64,000 bases of DNA from Ophelia neglecta (taxonomy: Eukaryota): assembly GCA_965285935.1 (NCBI GenBank), contig OZ260661.1, positions 144,460,001 to 144,524,000 on the forward strand, read 5' to 3'. Both the position numbers and the translations under genes were made by a program. Below, one piece after another: positions 7,085-51,785 of the stretch. Within the stretch, counting starts at the first letter, position 1; every line of letters begins with the position of its first letter. The notes below the pieces were generated by a model that searched no databases, had not been told where the DNA came from, and was given only the letters and a program-made list of their open reading frames with translations.

Positions 7085-7732
7085 GGCAAAATCATAAGTC
7101 AAGAATATTTCAATTAGTCGGTCCGAAATTCATATCAAGTATATGTGTAATTAAAGGCAAGGGTTGACTAGAAAACCTACTATATGTTCAAGGTCACAAG
7201 TGTGTCATGAATAATACTATTCTTCACAACCGATTAATATGAACTAACCAAAAGAAGTCTTCGTTCAGAGCATTTCTGTTTCACCAGTAGAATTGATTAC
7301 ATGATAATAGATTATTGTTTTAGACCAATGTCTAAGACACATGTCACGCAGACCGTTGAGTGACGCGTGTTTTGCATGGGTTTGGTATTTTGGCTTCCTG
7401 CACCTGCAGTCACATGTCAAGACAAATAGTGTGTCTATTGCACAAGGGCGCGGCTCAGGATCATAGACTAGAGGCTTAAAAAACAGATACTGCCTCGAAT
7501 GTTGTTTAATTCTGACAATAAACTATTGCAATAGGCATAGGTTATATGAAGATAATTTATGGACGAAACACGAAGGCGTTGGGTAAGTTTGATATAAGCA
7601 CCATACGCACACAAGGAATAACCAAATATAGTCTGGGCAGGGTCGTTAGTAGTAAAGATCTAATTGGGTGATTTAGGCACCGGAAGTAGTCGTTCATCCA
7701 GACAGGAGAGTTTATAATAACCGAACGATTTT

Positions 7733-10700
7733 ATGTTTGTGGGCCTGTTCAGGACGGAACTGGGATTGGTGTTTGAGGGCCTGTACGGGACGGAACTGGG
7801 ATTTATGTTTGTGGGCCTTTAGAGGACGGAACTGGGATTGATGTTTGTGGGCCTGTTCGGGACGGATCTTGGATTGATGTTTGTGGGCCTGTAGAGGACG
7901 GAACTGGGATTGATGTCTGTGGGCCTGTAGGGGACGGAACTGGGATTGATGTTTGTGGGCCTGTAGGGGACGGAACTGGGATTGATGTTTGTGGGCCTGT
8001 AGAGGACGGAACTGGGATTGATGTTTATTGGCCTGTAGAGGACGGAACTGGGATTGGTGTTTGTGGGCCTGTAGAGGACGGATATTGGATTGGTGTCCGT
8101 GGGCCTGTAGGGGGCGGAACTGGGATTGATGTTTGTGGGCCTTTAGAGGACGGAACTGGGATTGGTGTTTGAGGGCCTGTACGGGACGGAACTGGGATTT
8201 ATGTTTGTGGGCCTTTAGAGGACGGAACTGGGATTGATGTTTGTGGGCCTGTTCGGGACGGATCTTGGATTGGTGTTTGTGGTATGTACAGGATGAAACT
8301 TGGATTGATGTTTATGGGCATGTAGAAGATTGACCTGGGATTGATATTTGTTGGCATGTTCAGGACGGAACTGGGATTGATGTTTGTGGGCCTGTAGAGG
8401 ACGGAACTGGGATTGATGTTTGTGGGCCTGTAGAGGACGGAACTGGGATTGGTGTCTGTGGGCTTGTAGGGGACGGAACTGGGATTGATGTTTGTGGGCC
8501 TGTAGAGGACGGAACTGGGATTGATGTTTATTGGCCTGTAGAGGACGGAACTGGGATTGATGTTTGTTGGCCTGTAGAGGACGCAACTAGGATTTATGTC
8601 TGTGGGCCTGTAGAGGACGGATATTGGATTGGTGTCTGTGGGCCTGTAGGGGGCGGAACTGGGATTGATGTTTGTTGGCCTGTAGCGGACGGAACTGGGA
8701 TTGATGTTTGTTGGCCTGTAGCGGACGGAACTGGGATTGATGTTTGTTGGCCTGTAGAGGACGCAACTGGGATTTATGTTTGTGGGCCTGTAGGGGACGG
8801 AACTGGGATTGATGTTTGTGGGCCGGTAAGGGACGGAACTGGGATTGATGTTTGTGGGCCTGTAGAGGACGGAACTGGGATTGATGTTTGTGGGCCTGTA
8901 GTGGACGGAACTGGGATTGGTGTTTGTGGACCGGTAAGGGACGGAACTGGGATTGATGTTTGTGGGCCTGTAGTGGACGGAACTGGGATTGGTGTTTGTG
9001 GGCCGGTAAGGGATGGAACTGGGATTAATGTTTGTTGGCCTGTTGAGAAAGTAACTGGGATTGATGTTTGTGGGCCTGTAGGGGACGGAACCGGGATTGA
9101 CGTTTGTGGGCCTGTAGAGGACGGAACTGGGATTGGTGTTTGTGGGCCGGTAAGGGACGGAACTGGGATTGATGTTTGTGGGCCTGTAGGGGACGGAACC
9201 GGGATTGACGTTTGTGGGCCTGTAGTGGACGGAACTGGGATTGGTGTTTGTGGGCCGGTAAGGGACGGAACTGGGATTGATGTTTGTGGGCCTGTAGGGG
9301 ACGGAACTGGGATTGATGTTTGTGGGCCTGTAAGAGACGGAACTGGTATTGATGTTTGTTGGCCTGTAGGGGACGGAACTGGGATTGATGTTTGTGGGCC
9401 GGTAAGGGACGGAACTGGGATTGATGTTTGTGGGCCTGTAGGGGACGGAACTGGGATTGATGTTTGTGGGCCTGTAAGGGACGGAACTGGGATTGATGTT
9501 TGTGGGCCTGTAGGGGACGGAACTGGGATTGATGTTTGTGGGCCGGTAAGGGACGGAACTGGGATTGATGTTTGTGGGCCTGTAGAGGACGGAACTGGGA
9601 TTGGTGTTTGTGGGCCTGTAGAGGACGGAACTGGGATTGATGTTTGTGGGCCTGTAGAGGACGGAACTGGGATTAATGTTTGTTGGCCTGTAGAGAAAGT
9701 AACTGGGATTGATGTTTGTTGGCCTGTAGGGGACGGAACTGGGATTGATGTTTGTGGGCCTGTAAGGGACGGAACCGGGATTGATGTTTGTGGGCCTGTA
9801 GTGGACGGAACTGGGATTGGTGTTTGTGGGCCGGTAAGGGACGGAACTGGGATTGATGTTTGTGGGCCTGTAGAGGACGGAACTGGGATTGATGTTTGTT
9901 GGCCTGTAGGGGACGGAACTGGGATTGATGTTTGTGGGCCTGTAAGGGACGGAACTGGGATTGATGTTTGTGGGCCTGTAGGGGACGGAACTGGGATTGA
10001 TGTTTGTGGGCCTGTAAGGGACGGAACTGGGATTGATGTTTGTGGGCCTGTAGAGGACGGAACTGGGATTGATGTTTGTTGGCCTGTAGAGGACGGATAT
10101 TGGATTGGTGTTTGTGGGCCTGTAGAGGACGGAACTGGGATTGGTGTTTGTGGGCCTGTAGAGGACGGATATTGGATTGGTGTCCGTGGGCCTGTAGGGG
10201 GCGGAACTGGGATTGATGTTTGTGGGCCTTTAGAGGACGGAACTGGGATTGGTGTTTGAGGGCCTGTACGGGACGGAACTGGGATTTATGTTTGTGGGCC
10301 TTTAGAGGACGGAACTGGGATTGATGTTTGTGGGCCTGTTCGGGACGGATCTTGGATTGGTGTTTGTGGTATGTACAGGATGAAACTTGGATTGATGTTT
10401 ATGGGCATGTAGAAGATTGACCTGGGATTGATATTTGTTGGCATGTTCAGGACGGAACTGGGATTGATGTTTGTGGGCCTGTAGAGGACGGAACTGGGAT
10501 TGGTGTCTGTGGGCTTGTAGGGGACGGAACTGGGATTGATGTTTGTGGGCCTGTAGAGGACGGAACTGGGATTGATGTTTGTGGGCCTGTAGTGGACGGA
10601 ACTGGGATTGATGTTTGTGGGCCTGTAAGGGACGGAACTGGGATTGATGTCTGTGGGCCTGTAGAGGACGGAACTGGGATTGGTGTTTGTGGGCCTGTAG

Positions 10701-12440
10701 AGGACGGAACTGGGATTGGTGTTTGTGGGCCGGTAAGGGACGGAACTGGGATTGATGTTTGTGGGCCTGTAGAGGACGGAACTGGGATTGGTGTTTGTGG
10801 GCCGGTAAGGGACGGAACTGGGATTGGTGTTTGTGGGCCTGTAGAGGACGGAACTGGGATTGATGTTTGTGGGCCTGTAGGGGACGGAACTGGGATTGAT
10901 GTTTGTGGGCCGGTAAGGGACGGAACTGGGATTGATGTTTGTGGGCCTGTAGGGGACGGAACTGGGATTGATGTTTGTGGGCCTGTAAGGGATGGAACTG
11001 GGATTAATGTTTGTTGGCCTGTTGAGAAAGTAACTGGGATTGATGTTTGTGGGCCTGTAGGGGACGGAACCGGGATTGATGTTTGTGGGCCTGTAGTGGA
11101 CGGAACTGGGATTGGTGTTTGTGGGCCGGTAAGGGACGGAACTGGGATTGATGTTTGTGGGCCTGTAGGGGACGGAACTGGGATTGATGTTTGTGGGCCT
11201 GTAAGGGACGGAACTGGTATTGATGTTTGTTGGCCTGTAGAGGACGGAACTGGGATTGATGTTTGTTGGCCTGTAGAGAAAGTAACTGGGATTGATGTTT
11301 GTTGGCCTGTAGGGGACGGAACTGGGATTGATGTTTGTGGGCCTGTAAGGGACAGAACCGGGATTGATGTTTGTGGGCCTGTAGTGGACGGAACTGGGAT
11401 TGGTGTTTGTGGGCCGGTAAGGGACGGAACTGGGATTGATGTTTGTGGGCCTGTAGGGGACGGAACTGGGATTGATGTTTGTGGGCCTGTAAGGGACGGA
11501 ACTGGGATTGATGTTTGTGGGCCTGTAGGGGACGGAACTGGGATTGATGTTTGTGGGCCTGTAGAGGACGGAACTGGGATTGGTGTTTGTGGGCCTGTAA
11601 GGGACGGAACTGGGATTGATGTTTGTGGGCCTGTAGAGGACGGAACTGGGATTGATGTTTGTGGGCCTGTAAGGGACGGAACTGGGATTGGTGTTTGTGG
11701 GCCTGTAAGGGACGGAACTGGGATTGATGTTTGTGGGCCTGTAGAGGACGGAACTGGGATTGGTGTTTGTGGGCCTGTAGAGGACGGAACTGGGATTGAT
11801 GTTTGTGGGCCGGTAGGGGACGGAACTGGGATTGATGTTTGTGGGCCTGTAGAGGACGGAACTGGGATTGATGTTTGTGGGCCGGTAAGGGACGGAACTG
11901 GGATTGATGTTTGTGGGCCTGTAGTGGACGGAACTGGGATTGATGTTTGTGGGCCTGTAAGGGACGGAACTGGGATTGATGTTTGTGGGCCTGTAGAGGA
12001 CGGAACTGGGATTGATGTTTGTGGGCCTGTAGAGGACGGAACTGGGATTGATGTTTGTGGGCCTGTAAGGGACGGAACTGGGATTGATGTTTGTGGGCCT
12101 GTAGAGGACGGAACTGGGATTGATGTTTGTGGGCCTGTAAGGGACGGAACTGGGATTGGTGTTTGTGGGCCTGTAGAGGACGGAACTGGGGTTGATGTTT
12201 GTGGGCCTGTAGAGGACGGAACTAGGATTTATGTCTGTGGTCCTGTAGAGGACGGATATTGGATTGGTGTTTGTGGGCTTGTTCAGGACGGATCTTGGAT
12301 TGATGTCTGTGGGCCTGTAAGGGACGAAACTGGGATTGATGTTTATGGGCCCGTAGACGATTGACCTGATATTGATGTTTGTGGGCCTGGGATTGATGTT
12401 TGTGGGCCTGGGATTGATGTTTGTGGGCCTGTAGAGGATG
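7733..12440. repeat. 4.7-kb satellite array, 36-bp unit gatgtttgtgggcctgtagaggacggaactgggatt
   Basis: About 130 tandem copies; explains ORFs 8901-10259, 10286-12499 and 10592-12364. Confidence 0.98.
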
Positions 12441-13527
12441 GTTCCGGATGAAAAATAAAAGTCTTGATAAGAGTTTAGGTGTGTCTGCCGAGTAATCATT
12501 CTGGCTTTTATAGGCCTTAATAATTTGATATGCGTCCCACATATTAAAGATAACTCATCCTACCACTCGGTTTGTTTGTCGAGTATCGGTCCCCATTCCT
12601 CAACGTGCCAGGTAGGAACTGATTTAGTGAAATTCTAATACATATGGTTACAGTCAACCGAATGAAAGAACATAAATCCGTCACTTTCGCCTGCGAAATA
12701 ATTTTCCAGGATATATACTACTATGTTAATCAGCAATAACTTCATACATTCCATACCTCGCTGCGTTCTTAAACATGTCTACCACATAGTTATCATTGAT
12801 TTTCATGAAGACAAACAGATGTTTTACCGGTCTGGTATCCTAAATTCTGAATTGAATAATTTAAGTGGAATAATCCCCCACATTCTACACAAATCTTTGA
12901 GACAGGGTTAAGTAGAATTCATGGCATATCATTTAAATCCAGTATTATCCTCCCAACTACGCGGGAAATCTGGTTGGGGCATGGCAGCTATTTTGGGATG
13001 TTTGTTGTGCACCATGGAATAACAGCCGACGGGAGAATAAGTTGTTCTATGACAACCTACATCAGAACGTCGATTTGAATCTTGAAACCCATGAATCACA
13101 ACTGGAAATTAGTGAAAAGCTAGATTATTACTGACATTTAAGAAAGAAACCTACAGTCAACAAATTCTCCATTTAAAAGCTGTTACCCAAGGAATGTCAC
13201 TATAAACTGGCCTTAAAATATGTCTCGTGGAGTATGTTCGACCGTGGAAGCTTCTGCAGGCTAGTCTGGTGGAATCAAAAGACTCTGGAACAGAGAATAC
13301 CCAAAAGCAAATGACATTTGTGAAAAGAACAATTTGACATTGCCAGCCGAAAGAATGGAACACGGACGTAGATACGTTAGCCTGTGTCACGAACCAAATA
13401 GCTTAGACTTTTCTAACACTAAATGCAGGGTTGAAAACTCTCAAAGCCGATAACAGGTGTAGTTTTAATGACCAGAACATAAGACCTCCATACACAGTCA
13501 TCGCCCGGGCCCTAGCCTAAAAACCAC

Positions 13528-14240: not shown

Positions 14241-15509
14241 AGCCCCGTCTATCTTCTTTAACAGAGAGCCTGGCTGCACCTTGTCCCTTGAAGTAGTATT
14301 TACCCTCGGGTCCTCGCTGCAGATCATACAAATCTTTTGTGATCTAACGTTTTTTTCGACATAGTTTATTTTTACCCGGTATCTACCTTCAAGTTGGGGT
14401 TCACCTTCTACATTACCTGGAGGTAACATCGCGGAAAGGCTGGATCAGTAACAATCGCGACTTCCTCATCGCTTCAGACTGGCTTGCGATGGGGGTGGGA
14501 GTTTCAAACCTACAGGCACAGCTAGTGTGTATTGGTCCTAACAGTTATTTTGTGATAAATGACAGTGCCTCGGTTAGAGGGGGGATGGGGGGGGGGGGCG
14601 ACCACTGGGCGATGTAAGCAGAACCTGGTAATCCCTCACAACTTTCTGAGAAATCAAGTCCTCATATATCGGTATTCAAATTGTCTAAATATATATTTGC
14701 CAACTTAACACTCAACAAAGACATTGGATTTTATCATCTCCCCTTTGTCTTGTTCGATAGGATGGATATTAATTTAGTTCTATGAAAGGCAAACTCGGAG
14801 AATGAGCGCCGAACAAAACTCAGCAAGATGAATTCTAGGATAACTTATTTGCCTCGAGTAGAAGGCATATACACTGGGGGAAATTAGCAGAGATGGAATA
14901 AATATTGATAAATAACGTAATGAGGTTTGCGGGAGCTGCCATTGGTATAGATAGAAAGAGGGTAGGTTACGGGTGTCCCCGTTCCCATATCCAGTGTGAT
15001 AAAGAGCAAATCCCGAATCACGGATGTTTAAAGTCTGGATTTTTCATGCCATTAGGGATAAGGTATTTCCCGTTTTCCAATATACACTGTTTCGAAAAAG
15101 AAGAAACCACGACGGAAATTATTGTTTCATCGTATTTCATGTGGGCTGAACACACAGGTTTTAAGGCACATATGACAGGCCATATATGTGTATATGTATA
15201 TGTGTATTCTAAACCGATTCCCTGAGGGTTTTATTGCCAGTCCAAACCAATTTCTCTTTGCAGCAGCAATATTTTTAACAAAACTTCTGGCCAGATATCA
15301 AACACTTATTCATTGATCGGTGACAACCCTCTCTTCAGACATTCTAAACCACCTTACAGAACAAATTGGTAGTTTTATTCAAAAGGCGCCTGGTTTTCTA
15401 TAAGTTTAGAAGTTTTTGGTTGCTGAATTATCCACGCCATCGGAGTTCTGTTACACAGACCTGGCTTCGACACCAAACGGAAAATCATCAATCAAACGAT
15501 AAATACATT

Positions 15510-17154: not shown

Positions 17155-17219
17155 TCGGTTAAGTTAGCTAACACCTCGATTGACTCACCGCCCTATCCGA
17201 AGTAACTCTGTCCTATATA

Positions 17220-17395: not shown

Positions 17396-17557
17396 TATAA
17401 TTGTTACTTACACCAACAAGGGCGGGACCCTACAATAAGCTGTAATCAATCAATGAAAATAGCTACCAGGATGTAGCTGGTGAAGAGCGATACCACAGGG
17501 CTTTGTGACAGGCACTAACACACTTACGTTCTGTCGTCAGTAACAGATGTGTCCTGG

Positions 17558-19690: not shown

Positions 19691-19828
19691 ATGTTGACAG
19701 TGACACAGCACCACCCTACCGATGGACCATCCACTTCGGCGAATATCCCTAGCATCCGGGTACTAAATAGCAAGAAAACCAAAATAGTCCGAGATCCTAA
19801 CCAACTACCAAGTTTAGAGGAATTAGAG
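19691..19828 (+). CDS. Candidate alternative first coding exon: MLTVTQHHPTDGPSTSANIPSIRVLNSKKTKIVRDPNQLPSLEELE
   Basis: aaaATG, 46 open codons, GAG|gtaagg phase-0 donor. Confidence 0.6.
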
Positions 19829-22389: not shown

Positions 22390-25300
22390 TTTATATCTGC
22401 ATATACATCTTAATACTTGTGACACTCATCACCGTGTAATCACTGGGTACGTAGATGTATACACGGCAGACAAAGCGAAATCATTGGTCAAGAACAGTCC
22501 ATTAAATTGGTCAAGAAACACCAGTCACTGGCCCCAACACATCAATCCCCCTCTCCCAACTAGGACTAAAATGTGTAATGCAAAAATAAAGATAAGAAAG
22601 CATATATCTCGGTTATCTTGATATTAATTTAGGAGGTTTCTTTTTTATATGCCTTTTCATCCGTTCCACAGCTTTAAACAACATTAATATAATGTTTTTA
22701 AATTTCTGAGTATTTGTATACATGCCCGGGGGCTGAAGCTACGTCAAATGTATAGTCAGGTATATGCTGTTTTACATCAAGAGTTTATTTTACCATGTTC
22801 CTCTTGAGTATGTAGAGACCTTTTACACCCGTCTCAGGACTTTATCGAGATTAATCCATTTTAACTCACTATTAAGATCCTAGTCCACTACAGACTTTCC
22901 CATTCCATCTCTGTCGTTGAATACTTTATCTTTATTATGTGCTATGCATTGTAGAAAAAAAGTTGACTACTTAAGGTGATATCAATATTTTTTTAACTAA
23001 TTTCATTTCAAACTTATTTATAATTTGGTTTTATCCAATAAGAGAGTCTTGTCTGACTCATTGTACAAAAAAAAAATAATATACATATGTAAACAGAGTT
23101 AACACATTACAGGTCACACAAGTAAACACCAGTAGTAGAACAGAAATGTAATAGGCATATCGCGTTTTATTTTCTCTTCATCAAAGGCAAAGCCGCATTT
23201 TTTGAAAATAACAAGCACATCACTAACCAACGTACTGAAGCAACGCTGAGACGAACAAATAGGGTCTAAAACACTTAAGAAGAATTTTTTTCCTTGGACT
23301 TGGCCAACAATCTGCAGATAAAAACGCATTACGCCACTAGTCATTTCTATACCTGAAAGAAAGACACCACACTCTCCATACATTGCAAGAGTGTTTGTGG
23401 ACTGCTTGACCCAAACTTCATGTTCAGGTGATACAATTTTCTAAAAGACATATAGCAGCTGGGCGGGCGCCCTATAACTCACCTCCATTATGGGTTTAAT
23501 ACTGGAGTCAAATGACGATAAGGACACATCTAGCGGCAATTGACCCATCGATTGGGCCATTTTCTACTAGCAAAAACTGGTTTAAAACCATATCATACAA
23601 ATACCGATAATTCGTTTAAAAGATGTCACCCGAAATAGATCTGACCTCATGAAGTTGGTTACCTATGTATTTGTTCTGCTTAACACGCTGTAGAACATGA
23701 TCGCAAAATTTAATTTCAGCGCTCGCCACGCTTGTACATTCTTTAGCATGACCATGTATTTGGTTTTCGGTCATCAAAAGTTATAAGAGTTTTACTACAA
23801 AAAGTGAATAGCCCGTTGACCAGAGACTGTAGACCGCCGAGACAATCAAGGACCAAGATAAGGTCATCAGCCCATTAAAGGTGCAGAATAGATTCGCCGT
23901 CTATGACAATAGCTGACGTAACCAACTTGGTTCACTCCTGATAGACATTTCATTAAACCGCTCAGGCCCTCCGATCTTTTGACCCTGAACCTAGTTTTCG
24001 AATACTGGTCAAACCAAGTATTTATAACTTTATCGTGCAAATCTGACTTAGAATGATTGAATCTTTTTATAAGGGGTAATTTCATATACATGTATAGTAT
24101 TTTTTCCCCTGGTTCTGAGTCCCTCGGGACGCTAGCTGTAGCCGCTAGGCTGACGCCCATTGGTGCAGGGTGAACATTTATGTTTTAAAGAAAAGAATAT
24201 GTCTGCTAATCACGTCAATCGCCTTTGAACAATCAACAAAACAGACACACATAATTCTCCCAATACATAACTGTATCTGTATTAAGTCCCAATAGAATAA
24301 ACATTGTCACAGGTCCTTTATGAATCCACCGTTAAATTGATCCTTGGGCTAGACATTCAGGGAATTGTGATGTAGTAAATAGTCAAACAAATACTTAAAG
24401 CATGGGTCAAGCTGCGCCTTAATGAATTCCTCTGGAATGCAGTCATGTACGGTGGGTAGTGATCTGCGGAGTGATATCTGTGGGCGTGCAGGTGACAATC
24501 CCTGGTTTCGAACCGATTAACTGCACTATCCTGGAATTATGAATCTATTTGAGAATCAACTCCCATGATTTCTCTATTATTTTCTATAGCTCTTGGTCCC
24601 CCCGTTCCACCCACGGTCCCACGGGTGTCTTGTTCAATTATTTTGTCTCTGAGTTCACTGCGTTCTATGTCATCGTTGCACATCCATCACACATGGTATT
24701 ATGAATCCTTTTCGACTCATTTGAATTGAGCAGTCAAGCTGCCTTGCAATCGCCTGGCTAATTAGCAATCCCATCCAGGCCATTGGGCAGCCGACGATAA
24801 CATATTGCTAATTTGACCCTCAGTGTGGTGTTCCAAGGCCTTGTGTTTTCCGATGTATTGGTGGCAGGGGACTTAGGGCTGGGGGCTGCCGAGAAAATGG
24901 ATTACATAAAACTATAGATATCTCGCACATTGATCGATCGAGACTCGTTAGCGCAGTGTCCGTTGAGTTTAGAATTTAATATTGCTGACTGCTAAACATG
25001 TCTGGGAATTATTGATGGCGATAAAACTATTCCTCCCACATTCCCTCTGGTAATAGCGATATTAAGGAATTTTATCATTTCCTGAGGTGTCGTTCCTAAA
25101 TGTAAGATTTTACCAAGAGTTATTTTTGTGTCTGTTTATTGTTTGTAAGCCAAGGCGGACTCCACGCTTTTACTGACAAGGTTCCCATGAGAATACATGT
25201 TAAGTCTTTACTATGAATAACTGGGTAAACTACTTTACTGAACAAACCTGTTCGTTATAAATTTTGTGTGTCTGGTGGTACAATTTACCATCCCCAAGCA

Positions 25301-27468: not shown

Positions 27469-29211
27469 AACATCTAAGGGGTTAAAGATTATGTGAAATT
27501 GACCGAAAGGGGCAATTTTTGTCAACATTCCCAGCAACGAACAGAGAAATATGCAAAAGAATGAGAATAGTCCTAAGGTATGTCGATCGAGGCGGTCATT
27601 TTGAAAATCGCCGACATGAACAAACCCTGGTTTCCTGTTTGTATTTGGAATAAATGATCAAAGAAGCCATTGCTTACGGGTAATCGGGATATATGTGTGC
27701 GGTTTTTTAAGTGATTGTGGTGGAAAAGAAATCTTACATAATTGCACGATTGACCTAATTTAGTTTGCTATATATTAACCATTGTGGTATCTAGTATAGT
27801 GGCCGTTATTTGCTTTAATACGACGCTTCTCATGCCACTCTTAAAGTTTGTTCCCGGTTCGGCTGTAAACTTGCAAGTCATTGCTATGGTTAAACTGAAG
27901 CCGACTGACAATGAAGATCAGTCATCGACAATATACGTTTATACGGGACAAATATAAGCTGTCAGCTATAGCATTGCGCTAGTTGTTAAAATTATAACGC
28001 AACAAACTTAAGACAATACAATTGTTCAATTAAGTCACTTTCATCGAGAAGAGGACCAAAGTATCCCAAAATGTTAATAAAACAGAATGGCGTAATCCCA
28101 ACGTGGGACTAGTAAGAACTCGTAAAGGGAAAAACACAGGCTCATGTACTGTCGTATTTATAGCAGCTGGATAAAAATGGTTATTATTCTTGTGTATGAC
28201 TGAAATCCTGAAATTGACAACTATCATCAGGCGATAATGAACAACTCTAGGCTGTATTTGCCTGTACCAATGCCATTTTTTATAACTAATTTTTCACAAG
28301 TTTAGTCGGGGAACTGGGTATTGGAGTTTGTTGGCCTGCAGCTGGTGATTCCTGGTGAATTCTGACTATTTTATTTACTATTTTTGATGATTTTGTTTTT
28401 CTGCCGGGTAGCCACCCCTGTTTATCCCCCACTGCGCCATTCCACGACGTGTTTGTTTACATATCTGAGTGCTGATTTTTGTCCATTTGTGTGGTGTAAC
28501 TTTGAGTTGTTTGGTTCCTACAGTTTGCCTTCCTTTCCATGTTCTCTGGGGGAATGTTTACATTTAGTTCTCTACAAACCGTGCTTGTTAATCCAGCTTA
28601 TCCAGAATACATGACTGTTGTCACAGCGTCAACGACCTTTGATGCACATCGGATGCTATGTAAACACGGTAATGCCTAGTTGGCATGCTTCCCCATCCAT
28701 CAAGTCTATCAGAGCTGCCGGCTTCGTGTGTCTGAATATGGCATCATAACCAGGCAACAAGGCGGAGAGCTCCGTTAGAAAGTGGGGGATACAATGGTCG
28801 CTGTATTATCCGGGTCTCTGTATAAAGCGCTGTATTCGGCGCTGGGCGCTGCTGCTCCAGGTCGCATTAGAATTAGAAACTAGTGTTAGGGTAGGCTAAT
28901 CCCATTATTCTTTCCCAGCGCAGCGTTGACAGTAGGGCCCCGAGAACATGGAGCCGTATAACCCCGCGTGGTGGAAAATTGTCACAAAGGAATGCTCAAC
29001 GGCTTAGCGAGGTAGCTAGGATTTAGAGAATAGTCATAGCATTATATATATTTAAACGGAGTAGCAGTAGCGCATACAACACAAATCAGGAAGGCATTCG
29101 TTCAACAATTTTTACACCGAATGCTCTTGGATATTATTCGTTGTAATTTAAAAAGACCCATTACATGGCACCCTAGCTTAAAGAAATATCCGAAGAAGAG
29201 TGATATACTTG

Positions 29212-29277
29212 ATGTCGGCTGTACAGGCGCTGAAAGCAGATGTGGACGAGACGGTCGTTTGGCAGGCTCCGTGGGAG
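29212..29277 (+). CDS. Alternative first coding exon, WQAPWE family copy A: MSAVQALKADVDETVVWQAPWE
   Basis: ATG, 22 open codons, GAG|gtaggt phase-0 donor compatible with the 51671 acceptor; homologous to exons at 31241 and 37112. Confidence 0.8.
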
Positions 29278-31240: not shown

Positions 31241-31318
31241 ATGGCGGATGTACAAAAAGTTCCAACGATAGTTAAGACAGCGGAAGACGAGGTGCGGATA
31301 TGGCAGGCCCCGTGGGAG
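31241..31318 (+). CDS. Alternative first coding exon, WQAPWE family copy B: MADVQKVPTIVKTAEDEVRIWQAPWE
   Basis: ATG, 26 open codons, GAG|gtaagt consensus phase-0 donor. Confidence 0.82.
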
Positions 31319-31850
31319 GTAAGTAAAATGACTCGACGACAAGGCATGCACCCTTCACATAAAGTGAAGTGAGGATATGGTATGCGCTCTGGAATCGGGT
31401 GGGCCGGGTTGGGGGTGGGTGTGGGGGGTGGGGTGGGGGTGGGGTGGGGTGGGGTGGTGGTGTCAAATACAATGAGGTGCCGATATGGCATGCGACGTGG
31501 GAGGTATGTAAAATGACTCGACGACAAGGCATGCACCTTGAGAGCTACATAGAGTGAAGTAAGGATATGGCATGCGCCGGCGGGTAGGGGGGGGGGGGTC
31601 AAATACAATAGGTTGCCGATGTGTTAAATGAAGTGAGGTTATGTCATACGCCGTGAATCGGGGGGAGGGGGGCTAAATACAATGATTTGCCGTTGTGACA
31701 TGCGCCGTGGGAGGTCAGTAAAATGACTCAAGGATAAGGCTTGCATCATTGAAGCTACATTAAATGAAGTGAGGTTATATCATGCGCCGTGAGAGGGGGG
31801 TGGGGGTGGGGGTAAATACAATGAGTTGCTGATATGGCATGCGCCGTGCG
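31290..31850 (+). repeat. Tandem repeat built from the 3' end and donor site of first exon B, with G-runs
   Basis: atatggca.gc..cgtgggag|gt..gtaaaatgactc recurs at about 31298, 31483 and 31695; partial copies at 31375, 31563, 31775, 31831. Confidence 0.85.
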
Positions 31851-34800
31851 CCATATGGCCTGTGCCTTGGGACATAAGTACAATGAAGTACAGATGATGC
31901 ATGCGAGTTGGGGTTTATACAGCTGCCATACACAGGCCGGAAGGATAGGTGTGTTTTATAACGTTTACACTTTAATGACACTTCCTGACTGAGGGTGACC
32001 TTGTTAAATTCGTTTAAGGTAGCTTAACTTGATCCTGCTCAGGGTGTTTTGTAGGGATTCATGGTTGTGAATCTGCACTCGTCGGTTCGACCCATCTAAT
32101 GGAACATGATTGAGTACTGATTTTCGTTTTGTGTGCCGGGTATCCACTCCCGTTTTGCTACAGTTGATAATACGCGTATGAACAAAGGTCCATTCATGTG
32201 AAGTGTCATTCAATAAAAAAGCCCACACTTTAATTACAAGCAAAATTAATATAGTAGAGCAATTATGTAAAGTGTCTAGTAATAATTGTCACCGCAGTAA
32301 CTGATAAGTATCTGTTAGAACGTATAGAGGTCAGCATCCATTCCTAGTCATACAACTTTTCGCGAGGCCTATTCGTAGTACTACAGATGCGGTTACAACT
32401 ACCAAGTTAGTCATTGTAAACAGTCCTACCTCTCAGAATGTACGCCTCAGTCTTATGTATTAGGACTTTTCTTGATACAGAAAAAATAAACAAAATATTG
32501 GCCCTAAACAATTTTGTTTGTGTTTTTTAGTCTCTAGCTAGCCTACATTGTACCGTGTTTAATATCGGTTATCTGTGGCTTTTTCCGCAGTTGATTTATA
32601 AACATCACTGACCGAGAACGAACCAAGCAGGCACAACACGTAGAAATCACGTGTTGTAACCACGTAGAAATTTGTTTGAGAAAGGAATATATTATATAAC
32701 GTGAATTTTACACGTGGTAAAGACGTGTATGAAAACAGATGAATTCCACAGCATTTTACACGACTCCTCCACAAATTTTCCACCAGACACATGGAACTTT
32801 TACACGTGGCAACGCCGTGTAAATATGTACTAGTTGTACAAAACATAAAATTACATTGCTCGTCAAATTTATTGGGAACATCGTCCCAAGATAGTGACAT
32901 TCTACTTCTCATTCTGGCCTCCTACTGATATAAGGGCGATACCTGCACTGTGATCATGTGCTGGAAATCATGTTTAATAATTGATAGAAGAACCCAACCT
33001 GCCTTGAACACTTATTACACCCAGAACCTAGTATATTTATAATCACATGGACATAATATTCAAAACACTGACAAATGCATTCTTCTCTAAAGTGACATTA
33101 TTTCGATACATTTGGCTAGTCGATGTTGTAGTTGCTAATCGATGAAACTTTTTAAGTTTAAATGAGTGCATAATCCTCGGGGAATTTATTGGCAAATTAT
33201 TTTTTTTTGCAATCAGGGAGATGATAAAGAAAAAAAAATTTAACCCAAAATCAGTTTTATCCTGCTATCATTGTTCTTACTTTCGATTGATCTCCATCCG
33301 CCTTTCAAAAGATTTTCACCGTTAAGTCAACGTTGATTTGTGGTAATATGCCTGCTGGAATTAAATACCACAGGTATGAAGATGAAAAGTTACAGTTAGC
33401 CATAATGTATGTTTTAAAATTACATAATTATACTTCGCCAATAATCCAAATCTTTTCCACGTGTGAATATAAAATCTTTTCCACGTTCCCAAAATCACGT
33501 GGAATGAATGTGGAATTTACAAGTATAATGTCTCGTGATTAACCTCCACCAATAATACACATCTTTCCCACGTGTGAATTCCACATCTATTCCACGTACT
33601 TATAATCTACGTGAGAACAGGTGGATCCACCTGTTCACAAGTTATCCACCTGAATTCCACGTGGAAAACCACATGATGGGCCTACTGGGAACTTAATGTT
33701 CTGTCTAACAAGAGGCCTCAGTACCAATTTAACACAATTCCTATGGCGCATTCCCAAAACTCTTCATTCCAGGGCTTTGCTGCTAGCAATGAGCAGAACT
33801 TCCCGTTTTCGATTTTCTCAAACATGGAGTCAGCTGCCGTGCCAGTGCTATCACAATACCTGTATCTTTCCACAGAGTGCATTAAACAACAAACTCGCTG
33901 AGAGTCGCACAATTTGATGATGGTTAATAAGATAAAATCTCTAGTTCACGACATTGTACGTATAGCTTTATATTCAATTTCAAACAGGTTTAACACAGCT
34001 CTGCATACGAAACATATAAGTGACTGCTGTCAATTTTGACCCTCGAGCGAGTTACAACGACGAGCGCGGTGCATACTACTAACGCGCTATGTAAATTGGA
34101 TTATTGTTTCGTGACTTTCTCGGTCAAGGCTGTATAACAATCTGGACTGGCATATTCTAGAGAAGGGCGAATAAGTTACACATTAGCTGAAAGTTATCTA
34201 GTCTCATTTGTAATGTGTCGTCAGACATTGCCAGACGATCTTCTTCTTTTCTTATTAGTCCAAAATGAACCCCCTAAAGGCACATTTCATCAGTGTCCTA
34301 CCTTGACCACTGACTTGTTGTATTGTACTCGCATCGTGAAAACACCTGTTGACAACTTCTCAAGTTACATCCATTTTTATTGCTTCTTTTTGATTTTATT
34401 AAAAGCTTATTAACTGTTGGGGCGCTTGGGGTTTGAGTATAAGGGCTTGCCGCTGGTGGATCCTGACGATGCTGACCAATATAAACAAACCTTACCTGCT
34501 TTATGATTTTAATTTGCTTGGCGGGCATTCAATTCCGTTGTTATTGTTGAATATGGATATACATGTATTTTCCTTTTTCCACTGCCGGGAAGCTGTGTAT
34601 GCCTTACGAAGTGAGTTACCTTGGCGGTCTCATAAAAACACTCTGGTAGATACAGCCACGGTAAAGAGGCGGGTCGTGGCTATAATGACCAGGCCCATGA
34701 AAGCACATAAAGTATATGCTCTGGAAGATATAGCTTAATGTGCCTCTGAATGGATGGCATCTGATAGGAATGCAACCTTATAAGGCTTGGCGTGTCCTGC

Positions 34801-37111: not shown

Positions 37112-37189
37112 ATGTCGAATTTGAACACAATCCAAATTTCACCGACCGCTGAGGTTGACGCGAACATCATATGGCAGGTCCCCTTGGAG
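37112..37189 (+). CDS. Alternative first coding exon, WQAPWE family copy C: MSNLNTIQISPTAEVDANIIWQVPLE
   Basis: ATG, 26 open codons, GAG|gtaggt phase-0 donor; shares upstream aagaagagt and the start context tgATGTCG with copy A. Confidence 0.78.
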
Positions 37190-42729: not shown

Positions 42730-42756
42730 ATGGACCCTGCCTATGACAACGACAAG
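42730..42756 (+). CDS. Candidate short alternative first coding exon: MDPAYDNDK
   Basis: accATGG strong Kozak context, 9 codons, AAG|gtaggt phase-0 donor. Confidence 0.45.
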
Positions 42757-45520: not shown

Positions 45521-48500
45521 GGTTCCTGATGATGTCGGACTTACTAAGCTTTGCCTACCAGGTACCCACTCCCGATCTTCTGATCAATTATTTTGCATTG
45601 TCATTCAGTTATGCACTCCAGCATGATGATAAACGCATCACACAATCACCCATGTTCTGTCGGCTGTGATAATTCTAATCAAACCCCAATCAGCTAAATT
45701 TATTTTCAATTCGTTGGCTAAACGTCTAGATAAAAAGAAGCACGTACGAATGTTGATTTTCTTGAAAGGAAACCATAAGCTTTCTTAACATATGTGTTTC
45801 CGTTACGCTTGCGCAGTATCCTACCTTCTTGCCTAGTAGTATATTCTGTTATTCTCATTATTGCAACTTCTCAGAATTCAACTACTCGTCCCTATTGAAT
45901 CGACTATATTTGACATGATCCACTTACCCCCCTTAACATCGACCCAGGTTTTTGGCCATTAATTGGCACCGATTGCTTTAAATATAATTCTTTTCGCCAT
46001 TTTATGAGATATTACAGTCCTGTTTTCTGGTATTTCAGTCGTATTTTACAACTCTTTCATGGTCCCACTCCGGGTGATCCTTCAAACGTAATTTGATTTT
46101 GCTGTTATTATGAGTGGTATCGACCATTTTTGCCTGAGGGCAATAACATCAAACCCGTTTGTTATGGGAAATGTTTGTACTTGGCATGATATCTATGGGT
46201 TTTTTCATGTTGAGTGTTTTACCAAGCTTGACATATCACTTAATCAATCGAAACTACGTTCGTGTGATAAAAGCCTAGCAAATCATTTGCCATAGGTCCT
46301 ATAAAAATGCTTTATTTTCTAGCTTATCTTGTTTACCCACGGAGTTAGCTTCTACTAAGAACCATATGCTCACAATGTGTCGATGACAACCACAAGAGAT
46401 CCGACATTAACTAGCACTATCTCATAGCGTATTGGTACTTTGCAAAATAAAGAGAACAAACTACCGGTATCAGCTCGGTAAGAGGAGTGGATACCAAACA
46501 GAAAAATCAAAACCATCAAGCAAGAAATAAATCTGAAATAATCATGAACCGTTAGCCACAGTTTTTAAAATATGAAAACATGCAAAATGTATTCAGTTCA
46601 ATGGTAATCTATTTAATGGACATTCTTTATATCAGCGAAGATATATATGACAGATTTTTTTTTCACACCGGATACTTTATATTTATAACATTATGGGCCA
46701 ACCAGTTGAGACGAGAAAAGAGTCAGAAAATAGATATTGCATTTTTTGAGTTGATTAAAAAGTACAGGAGTAATGCTGTTTATAAAAATCGAGAGTAGTT
46801 ACTTGGGAGACAGAAATCGTTAAATAATTACAGTTCATTTAATCAGTACCCAATCACCAGGAACCACTTAACTCATGCCCAAACAGTCAATAAACTTATA
46901 ATGAAGTAAACAAAATTATTATTCGTATTGAGAAGAAATCAACAGTTGTCCAAGGTGCGAGGCAGCACAAAACACACGGGTCAGTGGTGATTATGGACAG
47001 ATCTAAAATATATCACCTGAGAGTCTATAGGGTAATAAGATCTTTCTTCATTTGGCGACATACGATGAATTTAGCTCAATACACATACGTCCATGGAGAA
47101 ATATTTCCCCAGCTGAGCAAATGACCAATTCAACTCTCATTTCTAAAAACTTCACAAGATGCAATAGAGTAGTTACCTATAGATTCCAGAGTAGTTCTAA
47201 ATTTTAGCTGATAAAGCAAATGCAGAAATCAAGATTTTTCTATTTGTCCTTAAAATGTCCCTGCATGCTAAAGACGACATTGGTATAGTATCACCACGAT
47301 AGCGCAAAGAAGGTTCAAATATGTTAGGCGAATGAGTCGTGCTTTTATCTTTAATGGACACGAGCTTCTGCAACAAAGGTCAGTGTAGATGTATTGAACA
47401 GATTCACATGGTCTATTTCCATGGGAAGAGAAGAGCAGATCACCCTAAAACATTGCGCTCTATAACTCAGGAAATGGCAGTGATTAGTAATCTATATAAG
47501 TTGATCAGACATGAGAATCTTTATTTTCCAGTTACCACAATGCCAAATAAAACGTGTATCAAATCACCCTGCCACGACAGTCCCTTGAGAACGATTAGGC
47601 TATTTGTCAGACAACCACACCCTTACTGTTTAATACGACGCTAACCAGGGCACTAGATCTACAGATTATGGCTATGCATTATTCAACACAAGGGTTTCCA
47701 CCAGTGATAATCCACTTGCTATAACATTGTATAATTACCTTGTGTTATCAGCCACGTTCTTTGTTTAGTAAATGCCTTGATGTTTATAATCAAACAGTTA
47801 GATTGGCATGGTACAAATATTATTATTCAGGTTTGTAGACTTAAGGCAGAACCGCAGGTGGCCTGTTGAATGTCAACAGATTAGGTTAGTGCATGACTAT
47901 CAGCCAGGTTTATGTGGCCTTGCAATATCGGCAAGGTAATATTCAAATATATTGGAATTGGCTGAATAGGTAGAAGTTTTCTTGGGGAAATTGCGAGATG
48001 ACTAAGCGATCATAATATCTATAGGACATTAATTGGAAGTGCAACTTGTCAGGCACCAAGTGAGTTCTAGACATTATATGACCCTCTTGTCTCCTGCCAA
48101 TCGACAGTCAATACGCAACCATCGATATGGCACTCGATCGCAGAGACTGGAGCCATAAATCACACTACTAACAGGATTGTAGCCAGGGGAAAAAACAGTT
48201 ATCATTGTGCAGGGGTTGCGCACAGGACAGCGCTCATAATTTTTGCTGTTAATTTTTGTTCTCATTACCTAATGGGTACTACACCTAATGGCCATGACAA
48301 CCCATGTTGTGTTGGCCAATCAGAAATCGGTGACATATTTGTAAATGCGCCTGTTAGGCACTGTGTCATTATATAACCAGTCCGGGTATACCGCACAATC
48401 ACAGGAATACAGGGACCCAAAAATAGGATTAAATCGTCCGATAGACGGTTATACCTCCTGATCCGAGGGGTTAACTGGTCCAGTGAAAAGGCGCTGACTA

Positions 48501-49112: not shown

Positions 49113-49176
49113 CAATTACATTTACATTGGTCGTAATGTAATGACCTAGTTAACCCTGAGGCGTTTCATTTGTGGC

Positions 49177-49302
49177 ATGTCTAGGATAGCGAGCCAGAGC
49201 GGGGCGGGGACCGGTGCCTCCTACCGTGGACTGGACCCCGAATATCGTGACATTGGACTGGTCACCTGCATATGTGAGGTCTGCTCTTGGTGTGTCGGCC
49301 TC
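49177..49302 (+). CDS. Candidate alternative first coding exon: MSRIASQSGAGTGASYRGLDPEYRDIGLVTCICEVCSWCVGL
   Basis: ggcATG, 42 open codons, GC-rich relative to flanks, CTC|gtaagt phase-0 donor, 2.4 kb upstream of the constant exon. Confidence 0.55.
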
Positions 49303-51670
49303 GTAAGTAAACAATTCATGACATGCATTGTTTGGACTCTCGGCCCTATTTTCGGGGCTTTTATAGGTGCAAACTATTCACTTAGGCTGTATCCTAGGGT
49401 TACGCATCATGGATTACGCCCATGGCTAGCTCCTTTTATCAGGTTACGTTCGCGTCTCTCTATATAATCGGATTACGTTAATGCCCGGTTATATAATCGG
49501 ATTTGGGTTGGGTCTGTTTCATGATTTGTTTAAATACTGGTAAATGTGTAGTGTGTTATTACGGTTATGCCTCTTCCCTTTTGGGATTAGAAGGCGTATT
49601 CATACACGGTTAAGGCCGATTCGGTAAGGTTTTATTTAAAACCATCAATTACCGAGAAAGCTTTACTTGCCTTGCTTCTGAAAATCCTTTGGCCCGTTCA
49701 CTCAGCCAAGTGATAAATAAATAAGCCAGGTAGTGGCGATGGGTTATATCCGTTTTACTGTGATTTTTAAATTAAGTCATCAATCTATTTTCTTTATTCG
49801 TGTCTAGTCCGTATCTTGTCGAGCAGTCGACTGTTGGTCTAAAAATAACTAGGTTGATCTTACAATAATAAGCCTCTGACAAGTTGGATTGGTTGATATA
49901 TACATGAACGCCAGGGAACATGTTGAGTATGAGGTCCTAACGCAACCAGACAACTAGTAAGAAGATAATCAGAATTGTCCTTACAGCTACCTTATCATTC
50001 ATCTGAATGCCTACATCGCCGGTTTCAATGGGATCATTCTTTTACTCTTGAAATTTCATTACCGTACTCAGCTATCGCTACCTTAATCCACCAAGCAAAC
50101 AAATCTCTGCCCCTTCCTCATGCTCCCCATCACCGGGTGGATTTATTACAAGGGCCGCTGAATAGATACCCATTGGACCAGGCAGTCCTCCAGGCTATCC
50201 AACAGCGACCCCTAACTACCACTTCTCACTACAAATATCTAAATGTCACCCCCCTTTATAAAAATCATTTGAAATTAGACTATAGACTAACTATCAATTA
50301 GTCGAAAAATATCCTTTAGTGTTATTTATTATAGAATCGAATATTGTCAGCAAGCTACCCAGCCCTAACTTCTCCTGGAATATTGGTTATATAGGCAAGA
50401 AGAGGAGGTGTGATTGTCCCATTGCTGGAACAACCAGAAGTTTACGCTTCACGGGATCCATAGTATAGAATAATTATCCTGAGATTATGTTTATATAAAA
50501 TCATTGACACGGACACCACCTTTAGAATCTAAATTTAAACAGGAAACCGACCATGGGTGATATTGGAATTTTATAAGTGAATGACTTGTACCTTCTTATT
50601 GTTAAAAACAATTATGTACAACACCAAACTCCAGCCGACATGTGCTCACCAGAGGGTGCCACCATCCTGTCTCCGGGGGGTCATTCCATCTTAAAGTTAT
50701 GTTATAGGGATTCTTGTTTTTACTGAATTCATTATGGTTAGAATCAGGACTAACTTTTAATCACGAGGGTAATAAAACCATCACTTATTTATTTACTTTA
50801 TATATTTATACAGATACAGGTAATCGAGACTTTACGGTGATATTGTTGATAATATTGGCTAGACAGGAAGTCTAGGTCAATTGCAAATAAGGAAGACACA
50901 AAAATACATAAAGCGCGACAAAAACATAAAAACAATAAACAGAATACCGCGTGCATCATAGTGTTTAGGTGCAGTTCACATAGATGTAACAGAGGGTTGA
51001 TTTATAAGCTCTCAGTTTGGACAGTTAATTTGGAAATCATCAAATTCCTTGCAGATCTTCTCAACGCGTGTGGAGAGCCGACAAAAGAAGTAACATGTTT
51101 TATTTAATTGTTGGTTTGAGCTGTCTGGTAAATGGGGCTTCTTTTCAAAATATTAGTCTGAGGTTTTTACAAATGAAGGTCCTGGGCCTGTCTGGTGTGA
51201 TAGTAGTATCACCAGGCATGACCTGATTCTAACGTCCTACAGCTACCTTAAAAGTAGTATTATTAATGGTATCTCCATTGATGGCCCAGAGCCTTACACC
51301 CAAAGGCTAATTATACATTGTACGCTTGAGTCAAAGCGAGAATACTTGACTAAAATGTATACTTAATGAACGTCTATTTTAACATTCTTTCGGTACATTC
51401 TTTTAACACCCTGATGGTCTGCCAACTTGTGCCAATTTTTATTTCTTCCAAGTCCCTGCCTTTTCCTCTCGTGATTACGTTTTTCTCGAGCTACATTTGA
51501 GCCGCCCTAGAAACGCGCTTTAATCGGAGATGTCAATGACCTTTGGACTGATACAGGGTTTACTCGAGGCTGCCGGTTACGGGTGGATGAAGACAGATTT
51601 CAATCATAAATCTAGAGCCATCGATTGGTTATATCTGTCTTTTGAATAACACATCACCTGTGTTTTTCAG

Positions 51671-51785
51671 GAGCTGGTCGGAAGTAGTCCTTCGGAGCGT
51701 AACTGGCGTGGGATCTTCATCTCCCTGCTGGTGATCGTCGTTGTCCTAGGTCTCATCGTCGCAGCCATCGTCCTCGTCACCCCAA
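51671..51785 (+). CDS. DPP10: DPP6/10-like first constant exon: juxtamembrane segment plus transmembrane helix
   Basis: tgtttttcag|GAG CTG GTC... translates to ELVGSSPSERNWRGIFISLLVIVVVLGLIVAAIVLVTP, then A|gtaagt. Phase-0 acceptor, no ATG. Confidence 0.95.

What the first reader, a model, noticed from the sequence alone, without database searches (positions are those of the whole stretch)
7559..51785. Locus-scale architecture: one constant body, a 30-45 kb variable region with at least 3 and possibly 6-10 N-termini
Seen: I found no other host gene in the 51 kb upstream of the constant exon, only repeats and scattered ATG...phase-0 donor units on the + strand. These are the WQAPWE trio, 19691, 49177 and 42730, plus weaker ones at 7559, 14920, 27551 and 34563. 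Inference: much of this region is 'intron 1' carrying multiple promoters, giving a repertoire of cytoplasmic tails of very different length and chemistry on the same ectodomain. Caveat: some ATG-plus-donor units are expected by chance in this much DNA.
Basis: partly seen in the sequence, partly recalled or inferred. Interest (0 to 1): 0.75.

Follow-up and report, generated by a model that had tools for sequence, protein, structure and literature searches.

The report
Alternative first exons of DPP6-like gene

Summary
The constant exon (51671-51785) encodes the ELVGS..RNWRG juxtamembrane and transmembrane segment of a DPP6/DPP10-type protein. A compact peptidase-like body follows it.

Five of the ten listed ATG-to-donor units have comparative support. 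Alpha (19691-19828), beta-B (31241-31318) and gamma (49177-49302) are conserved from ATG to donor in a tandem paralogue 75 kb downstream. Their flanks are at random identity, and summed dN/dS is 0.28, p 8e-6. Genome-wide, every copy with E below 1 lies upstream of a DPP6-like exon 2 on the same strand. Beta-A (29212) and beta-C (37112) are intact members of the WQAPWE family, but their only paralogue counterpart lacks an ATG.

Units 7559, 14920, 27551, 34563 and 42730 have no counterpart. Without the alpha and beta rows, the phase-0 excess is not significant.

A fourth conserved class, delta, lies 2 kb before the window.

No RNA run was available, so splicing and promoters are inferred. The architecture is published for vertebrate DPP6/DPP10 (PMC3973911). 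The scan had already reported the same design for the neighbouring paralogue (s1-740733).

The parts
19691..19828 (+). Alpha first exon, coding part: 46 codons, MLTVTQHH...SLEELE, with donor gag|GTAAGG at 19829 in phase 0
   Evidence: The blastn block to the tandem paralogue runs exactly 19691-19834 at 82.6%. Both copies keep an open frame, and dN/dS is 0.44. Genome-wide there are only these two copies. Local score against the paralogue's upstream region: z = 52.
29212..29277 (+). Beta-A first-exon candidate: 22 codons, ...VVWQAPWE, donor gag|GTAGGT
   Evidence: It has an intact ATG, frame, motif and donor. Its only paralogue counterpart is weak (about 110676-110795, E 0.004) and has GTG where the ATG should be. 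No other copy was found in the genome. z = 6.3.
31241..31318 (+). Beta-B first exon: 26 codons, MADVQKVPTIVKTAEDEVRIWQAPWE, donor gag|GTAAGT
   Evidence: It is 86% identical to the paralogue over 31236-31328 only. dN/dS is 0.17. Six further copies exist in the genome, all 2-17 kb upstream of an exon 2 on the same strand. Across the 7 copies, conservation is limited to the stretch from ATG to donor.
31474..31537 (+). Partial duplicate of the 3' end of beta-B with its donor (..IWHATWE|gtatgt) and no upstream ATG; a likely pseudo-exon or decoy donor
   Evidence: It is 92% identical to 31289-31352. A similar second copy sits after beta-B in the paralogue.
37112..37189 (+). Beta-C first-exon candidate: 26 codons, ...NIIWQVPLE, donor gag|GTAGGT
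   Evidence: It has an intact ATG, frame and donor. The closest other copy is the ATG-less paralogue unit at about 110670-110744 (48% identity, E 5.3). z = 5.8.
49177..49302 (+). Gamma first exon: 42 codons, MSRIASQSGAG...LVTCICEVCSWCVGL, cysteine-rich, donor ctc|GTAAGT at 49303
   Evidence: The blocks 49177-49310 match two paralogue copies at 82.8% and 71.8%. dN/dS is 0.23. A third-locus copy on C9 lies 7.4 kb upstream of an exon 2, with a phase-0 GTAAGT donor. z = 74.
24778..24998 (.). Conserved non-coding island between alpha and beta; a candidate regulatory element or non-coding exon
   Evidence: It is 72% identical to the collinear paralogue site and occurs only at these two places in the genome. 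Stop codons interrupt all frames.
47749..48318 (.). Two conserved non-coding islands (47749-47894 and 48094-48318) 0.9-1.4 kb upstream of gamma; a candidate promoter or 5'UTR region
   Evidence: They are 69-72% identical to collinear paralogue sites and unique to the two loci.
51671..51785 (+). Constant exon 2: ELVGSSPSERNWRG plus the transmembrane helix. It opens in phase 0 and ends one base into a codon.
   Evidence: It matches PDB DPP6 chains at E 5.5e-9 over residues 1-38. A library search gave 283 hits. The genome holds 8 copies.
53674..63271 (+). Constant body exons inside the window (exon 3 at 53674-53769, then the exons matched by tblastn); the body continues to about 66800
   Evidence: tblastn with nemertean, amphioxus and mosquito homologues gave about 45% identity. 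The sequence was read.
7559..7582 (+). Listed unit MDETRRRW|gtaagt: not supported
   Evidence: No counterpart in the paralogue's upstream region (z = -1.3). It lies at the edge of a 36-nt minisatellite.
14920..14961 (+). Listed unit of 14 codons: not supported
   Evidence: z = -0.5; no blastn or tblastn hit.
27551..27577 (+). Listed unit of 9 codons: not supported
   Evidence: z = -0.9.
34563..34610 (+). Listed unit of 16 codons: not supported
   Evidence: z = -1.3.
42730..42756 (+). Listed unit MDPAYDNDK|gtaggt: not supported
   Evidence: z = 0.7. It abuts the 38-nt minisatellite at 42770-44230.
4981..6845 (+). Retrotransposon fragment (two ORFs, the first with an RVT_1 domain); not a host gene
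   Evidence: Pfam PF00078, E 1.1e-15.

Best explanation
The window holds the 5' half of a DPP6/DPP10-type type II membrane protein gene. Several alternative first coding exons lie 2-32 kb (54 kb counting delta) upstream of a common exon 2.

Each first exon starts at its own ATG and ends at a phase-0 donor. Each is inferred to have its own transcription start and to splice to the acceptor at 51670/51671. Because no conserved acceptor precedes them, the downstream first exons are skipped.

The products share the ELVGS..RNWRG juxtamembrane segment, the membrane helix and the peptidase-like ectodomain. They differ in a cytoplasmic N-terminus of 22 to 46 residues:
- alpha: 46 aa, mixed charge.
- beta: 22-26 aa, acidic, ending in WQAPWE, in three tandem copies.
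- gamma: 42 aa, with a CxCxxCxxC cluster next to the membrane, a plausible S-palmitoylation site.
- delta: 26 aa, just outside the window.

What is shown: the exons exist, are conserved as coding sequence, and always sit upstream of an exon 2. What is inferred: separate promoters, actual splicing, and the role of the N-termini. By analogy with vertebrate DPP6/DPP10, that role would be tuning Kv4/Shal channel gating, trafficking or cell-type expression.

The remaining five listed units are chance ATG-plus-GT pairs.
For: Identity of the gene.
- Exon 2 matches DPP6 chains at E 5.5e-9.
- Body exons match DPP10-like and DPP6-like proteins.

Tandem paralogue.
- Its exon 2 lies at window coordinate 126743.
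- The only collinear coding islands between the two upstream regions are delta, alpha, beta-B and gamma. Each is bounded by its ATG and its donor.
- Flanks are 24-35% identical in register.

Selection.
- Summed dN/dS over alpha, beta-B and gamma is 0.28 (28.5 synonymous differences on 79.7 sites, 32.5 non-synonymous on 262.3 sites), Fisher p 7.7e-6.

Genome-wide copies.
- There are 8 exon-2 copies.
- The beta-B query found 7 places, the gamma query 4 plus one weak hit with stops, alpha 2 and delta 2.
- Every hit with E below 1 lies 2-43 kb upstream of an exon 2 on the same strand.

Shape of the beta exons.
- In 7 beta-B-type copies the mean majority fraction is 0.78-0.86 in the coding part and donor, against 0.49-0.53 in the flanks. 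No AG is conserved upstream.

Precedents.
- Four RefSeq isoforms of a Tubulanus polymorphus DPP10-like protein differ only before ELVGNS. Two Logan proteins of another species differ likewise, one of 798 aa on a 2500-nt contig.
Against: - There is no transcript evidence at all. The one run search listed 3 runs, none on record as RNA.
- A protein search with the gamma ORF found nothing, and the 150 listed representatives hold no similar N-terminus. The N-termini are therefore known only from this genome.
- Differences in alpha are spread evenly over the codon positions (8/8/9) and its dN/dS is 0.44, so its coding constraint is modest.
- Beta-A and beta-C have only an ATG-less counterpart in the paralogue and may be decaying duplicates.
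- One beta copy on C9 carries an in-frame TAA, so members of this family do die.
- Promoters are not shown. A shared upstream non-coding exon with mutually exclusive splicing is not strictly excluded.
- The genome search scores only the best candidates, so its copy counts are lower bounds.
Confidence: 0.8

Rival explanations
1. Only chance. The ATG-plus-donor units are what 50 kb of DNA gives by accident, and the gene has one first exon, perhaps outside the window.
For: Fisher's test of + against - strand gives p 0.51. After removing the alpha and beta rows, 8 of 18 units are in phase 0, p 0.22. Five listed units have no counterpart.
Against: Alpha, beta-B and gamma are conserved from ATG to donor while their flanks are random. 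Their genome-wide copies all lie upstream of an exon 2. dN/dS is 0.28.
Confidence: 0.03
2. The conserved islands are real exons but not independent first exons. One upstream promoter and a non-coding leader exon feed mutually exclusive cassette exons that happen to carry the start codon.
For: No promoter evidence was obtainable. Scattered AG dinucleotides occur 5-38 nt before the ATGs. A conserved non-coding island lies far upstream, at window coordinates -20916 to -20806.
Against: No AG position or pyrimidine tract is conserved among the 7 beta copies, and conservation starts at the ATG. Conserved non-coding islands sit 0.4-0.9 kb before gamma and about 0.35 kb before delta, as promoters would. 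Vertebrate DPP6/DPP10 use separate promoters (PMC3366920 introduction, passage read).
Confidence: 0.1
3. The islands are conserved for another reason, such as small independent ORFs, enhancers, or exons of an unannotated overlapping gene, and are not joined to the DPP6-like body.
For: Alpha shows no excess of third-position changes. Non-coding islands are conserved to a similar length.
Against: All four classes keep an ATG, an open frame without indels and a phase-0 GT donor that fits the phase-0 start of exon 2. Their order is collinear in both loci. Beta and gamma copies accompany exon 2 on another chromosome piece as well.
Confidence: 0.05

Closest known systems
Vertebrate DPP6 and DPP10 (DPLP genes): variants DPP6a/K/L/D/S and DPP10a-d
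   Same: A common exon 2 begins at ELVGS..RNW(K/R)G plus the membrane helix. Several alternative first exons each encode a short cytoplasmic N-terminus and join in phase 0. The variable region is long and the core is shared. Sources; representatives listed; PMC3973911 section 7 and PMC3366920 introduction and Figure 1 legend (passages read).
   Different: The N-terminal sequences are unrelated. One class is tandemly triplicated here. The body is compact (about 15 kb). The catalytic GW|SYGG motif is intact, 1.1-1.6 kb beyond the window, whereas DPP6 and DPP10 have Asp and Gly at the serine position (PMC4873792, passage read). The genome has 8 paralogues against two in vertebrates.
Fly DPP10 (PMC4873792)
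   Same: It is an invertebrate DPP10-type protein with the DPP6/10-like transmembrane region and a retained catalytic serine. It was shown to bind and modulate Kv4.3 and to cleave peptides (abstract and passages read).
   Different: That paper mentions no isoforms or splice variants: the words 'isoform' and 'splice' occur 0 times in its text. No functional data exist for the gene here.
Tubulanus polymorphus 'inactive dipeptidyl peptidase 10-like' isoforms X1-X4 (RefSeq names)
   Same: It is the closest full-length relative found, at about 45% identity. Its four annotated isoforms differ only in the 16-59 residues before ELVGNS, and the GWSYGG motif is intact.
   Different: Its N-termini share no similarity with alpha, beta or gamma. 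I did not examine its locus structure.
Clustered variable-first-exon loci (protocadherin, UGT1A); features recalled, not looked up
   Same: A tandem array of paralogous variable first exons (beta-A, B, C) lies upstream of constant exons.
   Different: The variable exons here are 22-46 codons, not whole domains. No conserved upstream promoter element is shared among the beta copies. Only three copies sit in this gene.

Membership tests
DPP6/DPP10-type (DPLP) gene | Conserved juxtamembrane ELVGS..RNW(K/R)G motif followed by a single membrane helix, encoded at the start of the common exon 2 | tested here: met
   PDB DPP6 chains at E 5.5e-9, aligned over residues 1-38. 283 library hits, and the vertebrate, nemertean and other spliced entries among the 150 listed begin the shared part at the same point.
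DPP6/DPP10-type (DPLP) gene | DPP4-family ectodomain (beta-propeller plus alpha/beta-hydrolase) downstream | tested here: met
   tblastn with P0069, P0095 and others hits exons from 55804 to about 66793 in query order, at about 45% identity. No fold was predicted.
DPP6/DPP10-type (DPLP) gene | Several alternative first exons, each with an ATG and a donor in the phase of exon 2 | tested here: met
   Met at the sequence level only. Alpha, beta-B, gamma and delta are conserved from ATG to phase-0 donor.
DPP6/DPP10-type (DPLP) gene | Transcripts that join each first exon to exon 2, from separate promoters | not testable with these tools
   No RNA run was listed.
DPP6/DPP10-type (DPLP) gene | Loss of the catalytic serine (Asp in DPP6, Gly in DPP10) | tested here: not met
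   GW|SYGG is split by an intron but intact, at window coordinates about 65141-65560. In this respect the gene resembles fly DPP10, which is active (PMC4873792).
DPP6/DPP10-type (DPLP) gene | Binding to and gating modulation of Kv4/Shal channels | not testable with these tools
   This needs co-expression and electrophysiology.
Clustered variable-first-exon locus (protocadherin/UGT1A type) | Each variable exon is preceded by a conserved promoter element shared across the array | tested here: not met
   In 7 beta copies compared in register, the 90 nt upstream are at background (0.49-0.53 majority fraction).

The most novel reading that the evidence does not exclude
The array of first-exon classes (delta, alpha, beta, gamma) predates the expansion of this catalytically intact DPP6/10-like gene to eight paralogues. 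Gene copies multiplied by N-termini would then give a few dozen channel-partner isoforms in an invertebrate.

Within that array, delta opens with MNAGA. The vertebrate exon-1a 'ball' opens with MNQTA and causes N-type inactivation (motif quoted in the PMC3366920 introduction). Delta could be the same inactivation particle, which would date that mechanism to before the split of the bilaterian lineages.

The WQAPWE and CxCxxCxxC ends would be new cytoplasmic modules for gating or palmitoyl anchoring.
Probability: 0.12. Interest if true: 0.6.

Novelty: new member of a known kind. Interest (0 to 1): 0.35.

Why it matters
Vertebrate neurons diversify A-type potassium currents partly through the variable N-termini of DPP6/DPP10. 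The same gene design, with lineage-specific N-terminal classes, is present and under selection in a distant animal whose protein still looks like an active peptidase. This suggests the variable-N-terminus strategy is older than the loss of enzyme activity.

For annotation, the result gives five exons in the window and one just outside it that gene predictors working without RNA would probably miss. It also removes five false ones. Finally, it shows that tandem paralogues can serve as a footprinting control when no RNA data exist.

Tried and rejected
- RNA evidence. The look-up of sequencing runs (kind rna) on 51400-53800 listed 3 runs of one study, none on record as RNA. They hold 32-65% of the words of a mostly intronic stretch, so I take them for DNA. 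I did not use read laying, because contigs of DNA runs cannot show splicing.
- Relatives of the N-termini. The search for homologous proteins with the gamma ORF, region 1-42, found no candidate. blastp-short of the five N-terminal peptides against the 150 listed representatives gave only short chance matches, best E 1.3. A regular-expression search for WQAPWE-like motifs in those 150 gave none.
- Identity of the organism. The best full-length relatives are about 45% identical, whether nemertean, amphioxus, mosquito or an unnamed Logan species. The phylum stays open.
- Small island at 38689. A short similarity of about 45 nt with 116084 is non-coding and unexplained.
- Island at 22456-22511. 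It matches several places in the paralogue region and is a dispersed repeat.
- Islands at 17215-17397, 19071-19266, 13523-14237 and 45215-45523. These are dispersed repeats with many hits.
- Wider paralogue comparison. Fetching the C9 loci in full, to look for further exon classes, was not possible (see below).
- Supplements. Supplementary files of the papers were not consulted. They may hold alignments of vertebrate N-termini that bear on the MNQTA comparison.

Full report
What the constant part is. The acceptor ttttcag| ends at 51670, and the exon 51671-51785 is followed by gtaagt. Its 38 codons read ELVGSSPSERNWRG followed by a hydrophobic helix. They match DPP6 chains of Kv4 complexes over the full length (7ukg_I, E 5.5e-9). 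A search of 1.84 billion representatives gave 283 hits at E up to 0.001. Among the 150 listed, the vertebrate, nemertean and other spliced entries all start the shared part at the same ELV(G) point. tblastn with the full-length hits maps further exons, in query order, from 55804 to 63271 in the window and on to about 66800. The catalytic motif is split by an intron as GW|SYGG and is intact, 1.1-1.6 kb beyond the window. The gene is thus of the DPP6/DPP10 type at its N-terminus and membrane segment, and of the active DPP4 type at the serine. Fly DPP10 is described the same way (PMC4873792, abstract and passages).

What lies upstream. The 51 kb before exon 2 holds at least eight minisatellite arrays, the largest at 7733-12389, and a reverse-transcriptase fragment at 4981-6845. 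The ten ORFs I sent to Pfam had no other domain; I picked them among the 35 of 95 aa or more, and the other 25 were not sent. There is no Rfam family and no tRNA. No DPP-like exon occurs in the 111 kb before exon 2. A small gene without a Pfam hit cannot be excluded.

I scored donors with a simple weight matrix. I counted ATG-opened frames of 8 codons or more that end at a donor, for each phase and strand, in 1-51600.
- At 4 bits or more, the + strand gave 13/4/6 in phases 0/1/2 and the - strand gave 6/2/6.
- Thirteen of 23 is above one third (p 0.019), but + against - is not significant (Fisher p 0.51).
- Five of the 13 rows belong to 19691 and the WQAPWE family. Without them, 8 of 18 remain (p 0.22).
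- The unit at 49177 was not even caught, because its donor CTC|GTAAGT scores 2.2.

The decisive control is a tandem paralogue.
- A DNA search of the whole genome with 28800-31700 returned one outside hit. It was 93 bases at 86%, covering only the second WQAPWE unit, about 81 kb downstream.
- I fetched 60 kb before and 100 kb after the window. A second DPP6-like gene has its exon 2 at window coordinate 126743 (92% protein identity) and its own WQAPWE exon 14 kb upstream.
- blastn of the two upstream regions gave many repeat hits and a few single, collinear islands: 19691-19834 with 100139-100282 (82.6%); 31236-31328 with 112607-112699 (86%); and 49177-49310 with 124796-124929 (82.8%) and with 123306-123447 (71.8%).
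- Each block begins at the ATG and ends a few bases after the GT. The 100 bases on either side are 24-35% identical in register.
- Over the three exons there are 28.5 synonymous differences on 79.7 sites and 32.5 non-synonymous on 262.3 sites. That gives dN/dS 0.28, Fisher p 7.7e-6. The single values are 0.44 for alpha, 0.17 for beta-B and 0.23 for gamma, against 0.04 for exon 2.
- Against this reading, the differences in alpha are spread 8/8/9 over the codon positions, so its constraint is modest.

Genome-wide copies.
- The genome has 8 exon-2 copies: two on C1 and six on C9.
- The beta-B peptide finds 7 places: two on C1 and five on C9. Each lies 2.3-16.9 kb upstream of an exon 2 on the same strand.
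- All 7 have 26 codons from ATG to (I/V)W.AP(W/L)E gag|GT. One carries an in-frame TAA.
- In register, these 7 copies show majority fractions of 0.78-0.86 in the coding part and donor, against 0.49-0.53 in the 90 bases either side. No AG position is conserved upstream. This fits first exons rather than internal cassettes.
- Gamma finds four places plus one weak hit with stops (E 1.5). The copy on C9 lies 7.4 kb upstream of an exon 2 and ends LVTCICEIFGL|GTAAGT in phase 0.
- Alpha finds only the C1 pair.

The other listed units. Beta-A (29212-29277) and beta-C (37112-37189, motif WQVPLE) are intact. Their only counterpart is one paralogue unit at about 110670-110795. It reads ...IIWRVPRE|gta and has GTG in place of the ATG. 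They may be functional, or they may be on the way out. For 7559, 14920, 27551, 34563 and 42730, a local alignment against the 60 kb paralogue region scored no better than shuffled copies (z from -1.3 to 0.7). The same test gave z of 36-74 for alpha, beta-B and gamma, and about 6 for beta-A and beta-C. I take these five for chance units.

- A fourth class, delta (MNAGASTSTAVHQSHRRLPQSDSGLE|gtaggt, 26 codons), lies at window coordinates -2058 to -1981. It is conserved from ATG to donor in the paralogue at 84129-84206. The variable region therefore reaches at least 53.7 kb.
- Non-coding islands unique to the two loci lie at 24778-24998, 47749-47894 and 48094-48318, and about 0.35 kb before delta. 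The last three sit where promoters of gamma and delta would be expected.
- The order is the same in both loci: delta, alpha, beta, gamma, exon 2.

How it most likely works. Each first exon is transcribed from its own start and spliced to 51671, and the proteins differ only in the cytoplasmic tail. [quoted passage not shown] It is also stated as 'multiple promoter sites' (PMC3366920 introduction). There the variants differ in expression and in their effect on Kv4 gating (PMC3973911 sections 7 and 13, passages). The design is also annotated outside vertebrates. Four RefSeq isoforms of a nemertean DPP10-like protein, and two Logan proteins of another species, differ only before ELVG. Two full-text searches listed no paper on such variants in invertebrates, though I saw only listings and abstracts for most hits. 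Function of the tails is inference:
- Gamma's CxCxxCxxC cluster next to the membrane suggests palmitoylation.
- The WQAPWE end of beta is a conserved motif of unknown role.
- Delta's MNAGA start recalls the MNQTA ball of DPP6a/DPP10a (motif quoted in PMC3366920), but three shared residues out of five prove nothing.

Limits. There is no RNA. The organism is unidentified. Copy counts from the genome search are lower bounds. The C9 loci could be read only in short pieces.

Earlier notes of this scan described the same design for the neighbouring paralogue, with a follow-up that counted at least five conserved first exons there (s1-740733). My mapping of that locus gives delta, alpha, an ATG-less beta, beta-B and two gammas, which agrees with that count.

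Verdict. This is a real feature and a new member of a known kind.

Noticed in passing
L006:7942-8019 (window coordinates -2058 to -1981): A fourth conserved first-exon class (delta, 26 codons, phase-0 gtaggt donor) lies 2 kb before the window. A conserved non-coding island sits about 0.35 kb upstream of it. Both are collinear with the paralogue.
   Followed up: yes
L007:1093-1400 (window coordinates about 65093-65400): The exon ending ..IAIWGW|gtaagt is followed by about nine 27-nt repeats, each of which repeats the end of the exon and its donor. The next exon starts SYGGF, so the catalytic motif is intact but sits next to an array of duplicate donors.
   Followed up: partly
window 31289-31352 and 31474-31537: A 185-nt tandem duplication copies the last codons of beta-B with its donor (92% identity) but not its ATG, leaving a stray donor. 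The paralogue has a similar second copy.
   Followed up: partly
G000 C9 (exon-2 copies near 0.71, 7.17, 7.22, 8.90, 8.92 and 9.01 Mb): Six further DPP6-like genes sit on another chromosome piece. Several carry beta or gamma first exons. Two beta copies with nearly identical intron starts lie on opposite strands, which suggests a recent inverted duplication.
   Followed up: partly
window 7733-12389, 35053-36685, 42770-44230, 52577-53648, 54494-55410: Long minisatellites with 22-39-nt units fill much of the introns. The one at 52577-53648 is a C-run plus ACGACACTTAGTGTA unit inside intron 2. A related 36-38-nt array stands in the paralogue's upstream region and again 24 kb before the window.
   Followed up: no
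window 17215-17397, 19071-19266, 63310-63490: A dispersed repeat of about 180 nt, probably a SINE-like element, has many copies in both loci, one of them 0.4 kb before alpha. The third place was judged by eye only.
   Followed up: no
window 57030-57095: A stretch in an intron looks tRNA-derived by eye, but ARAGORN and Rfam call nothing there.
   Followed up: partly
window 38689-38740: A non-coding match of about 45 nt to the collinear paralogue site (116084-116134). Its meaning is unknown.
   Followed up: partly
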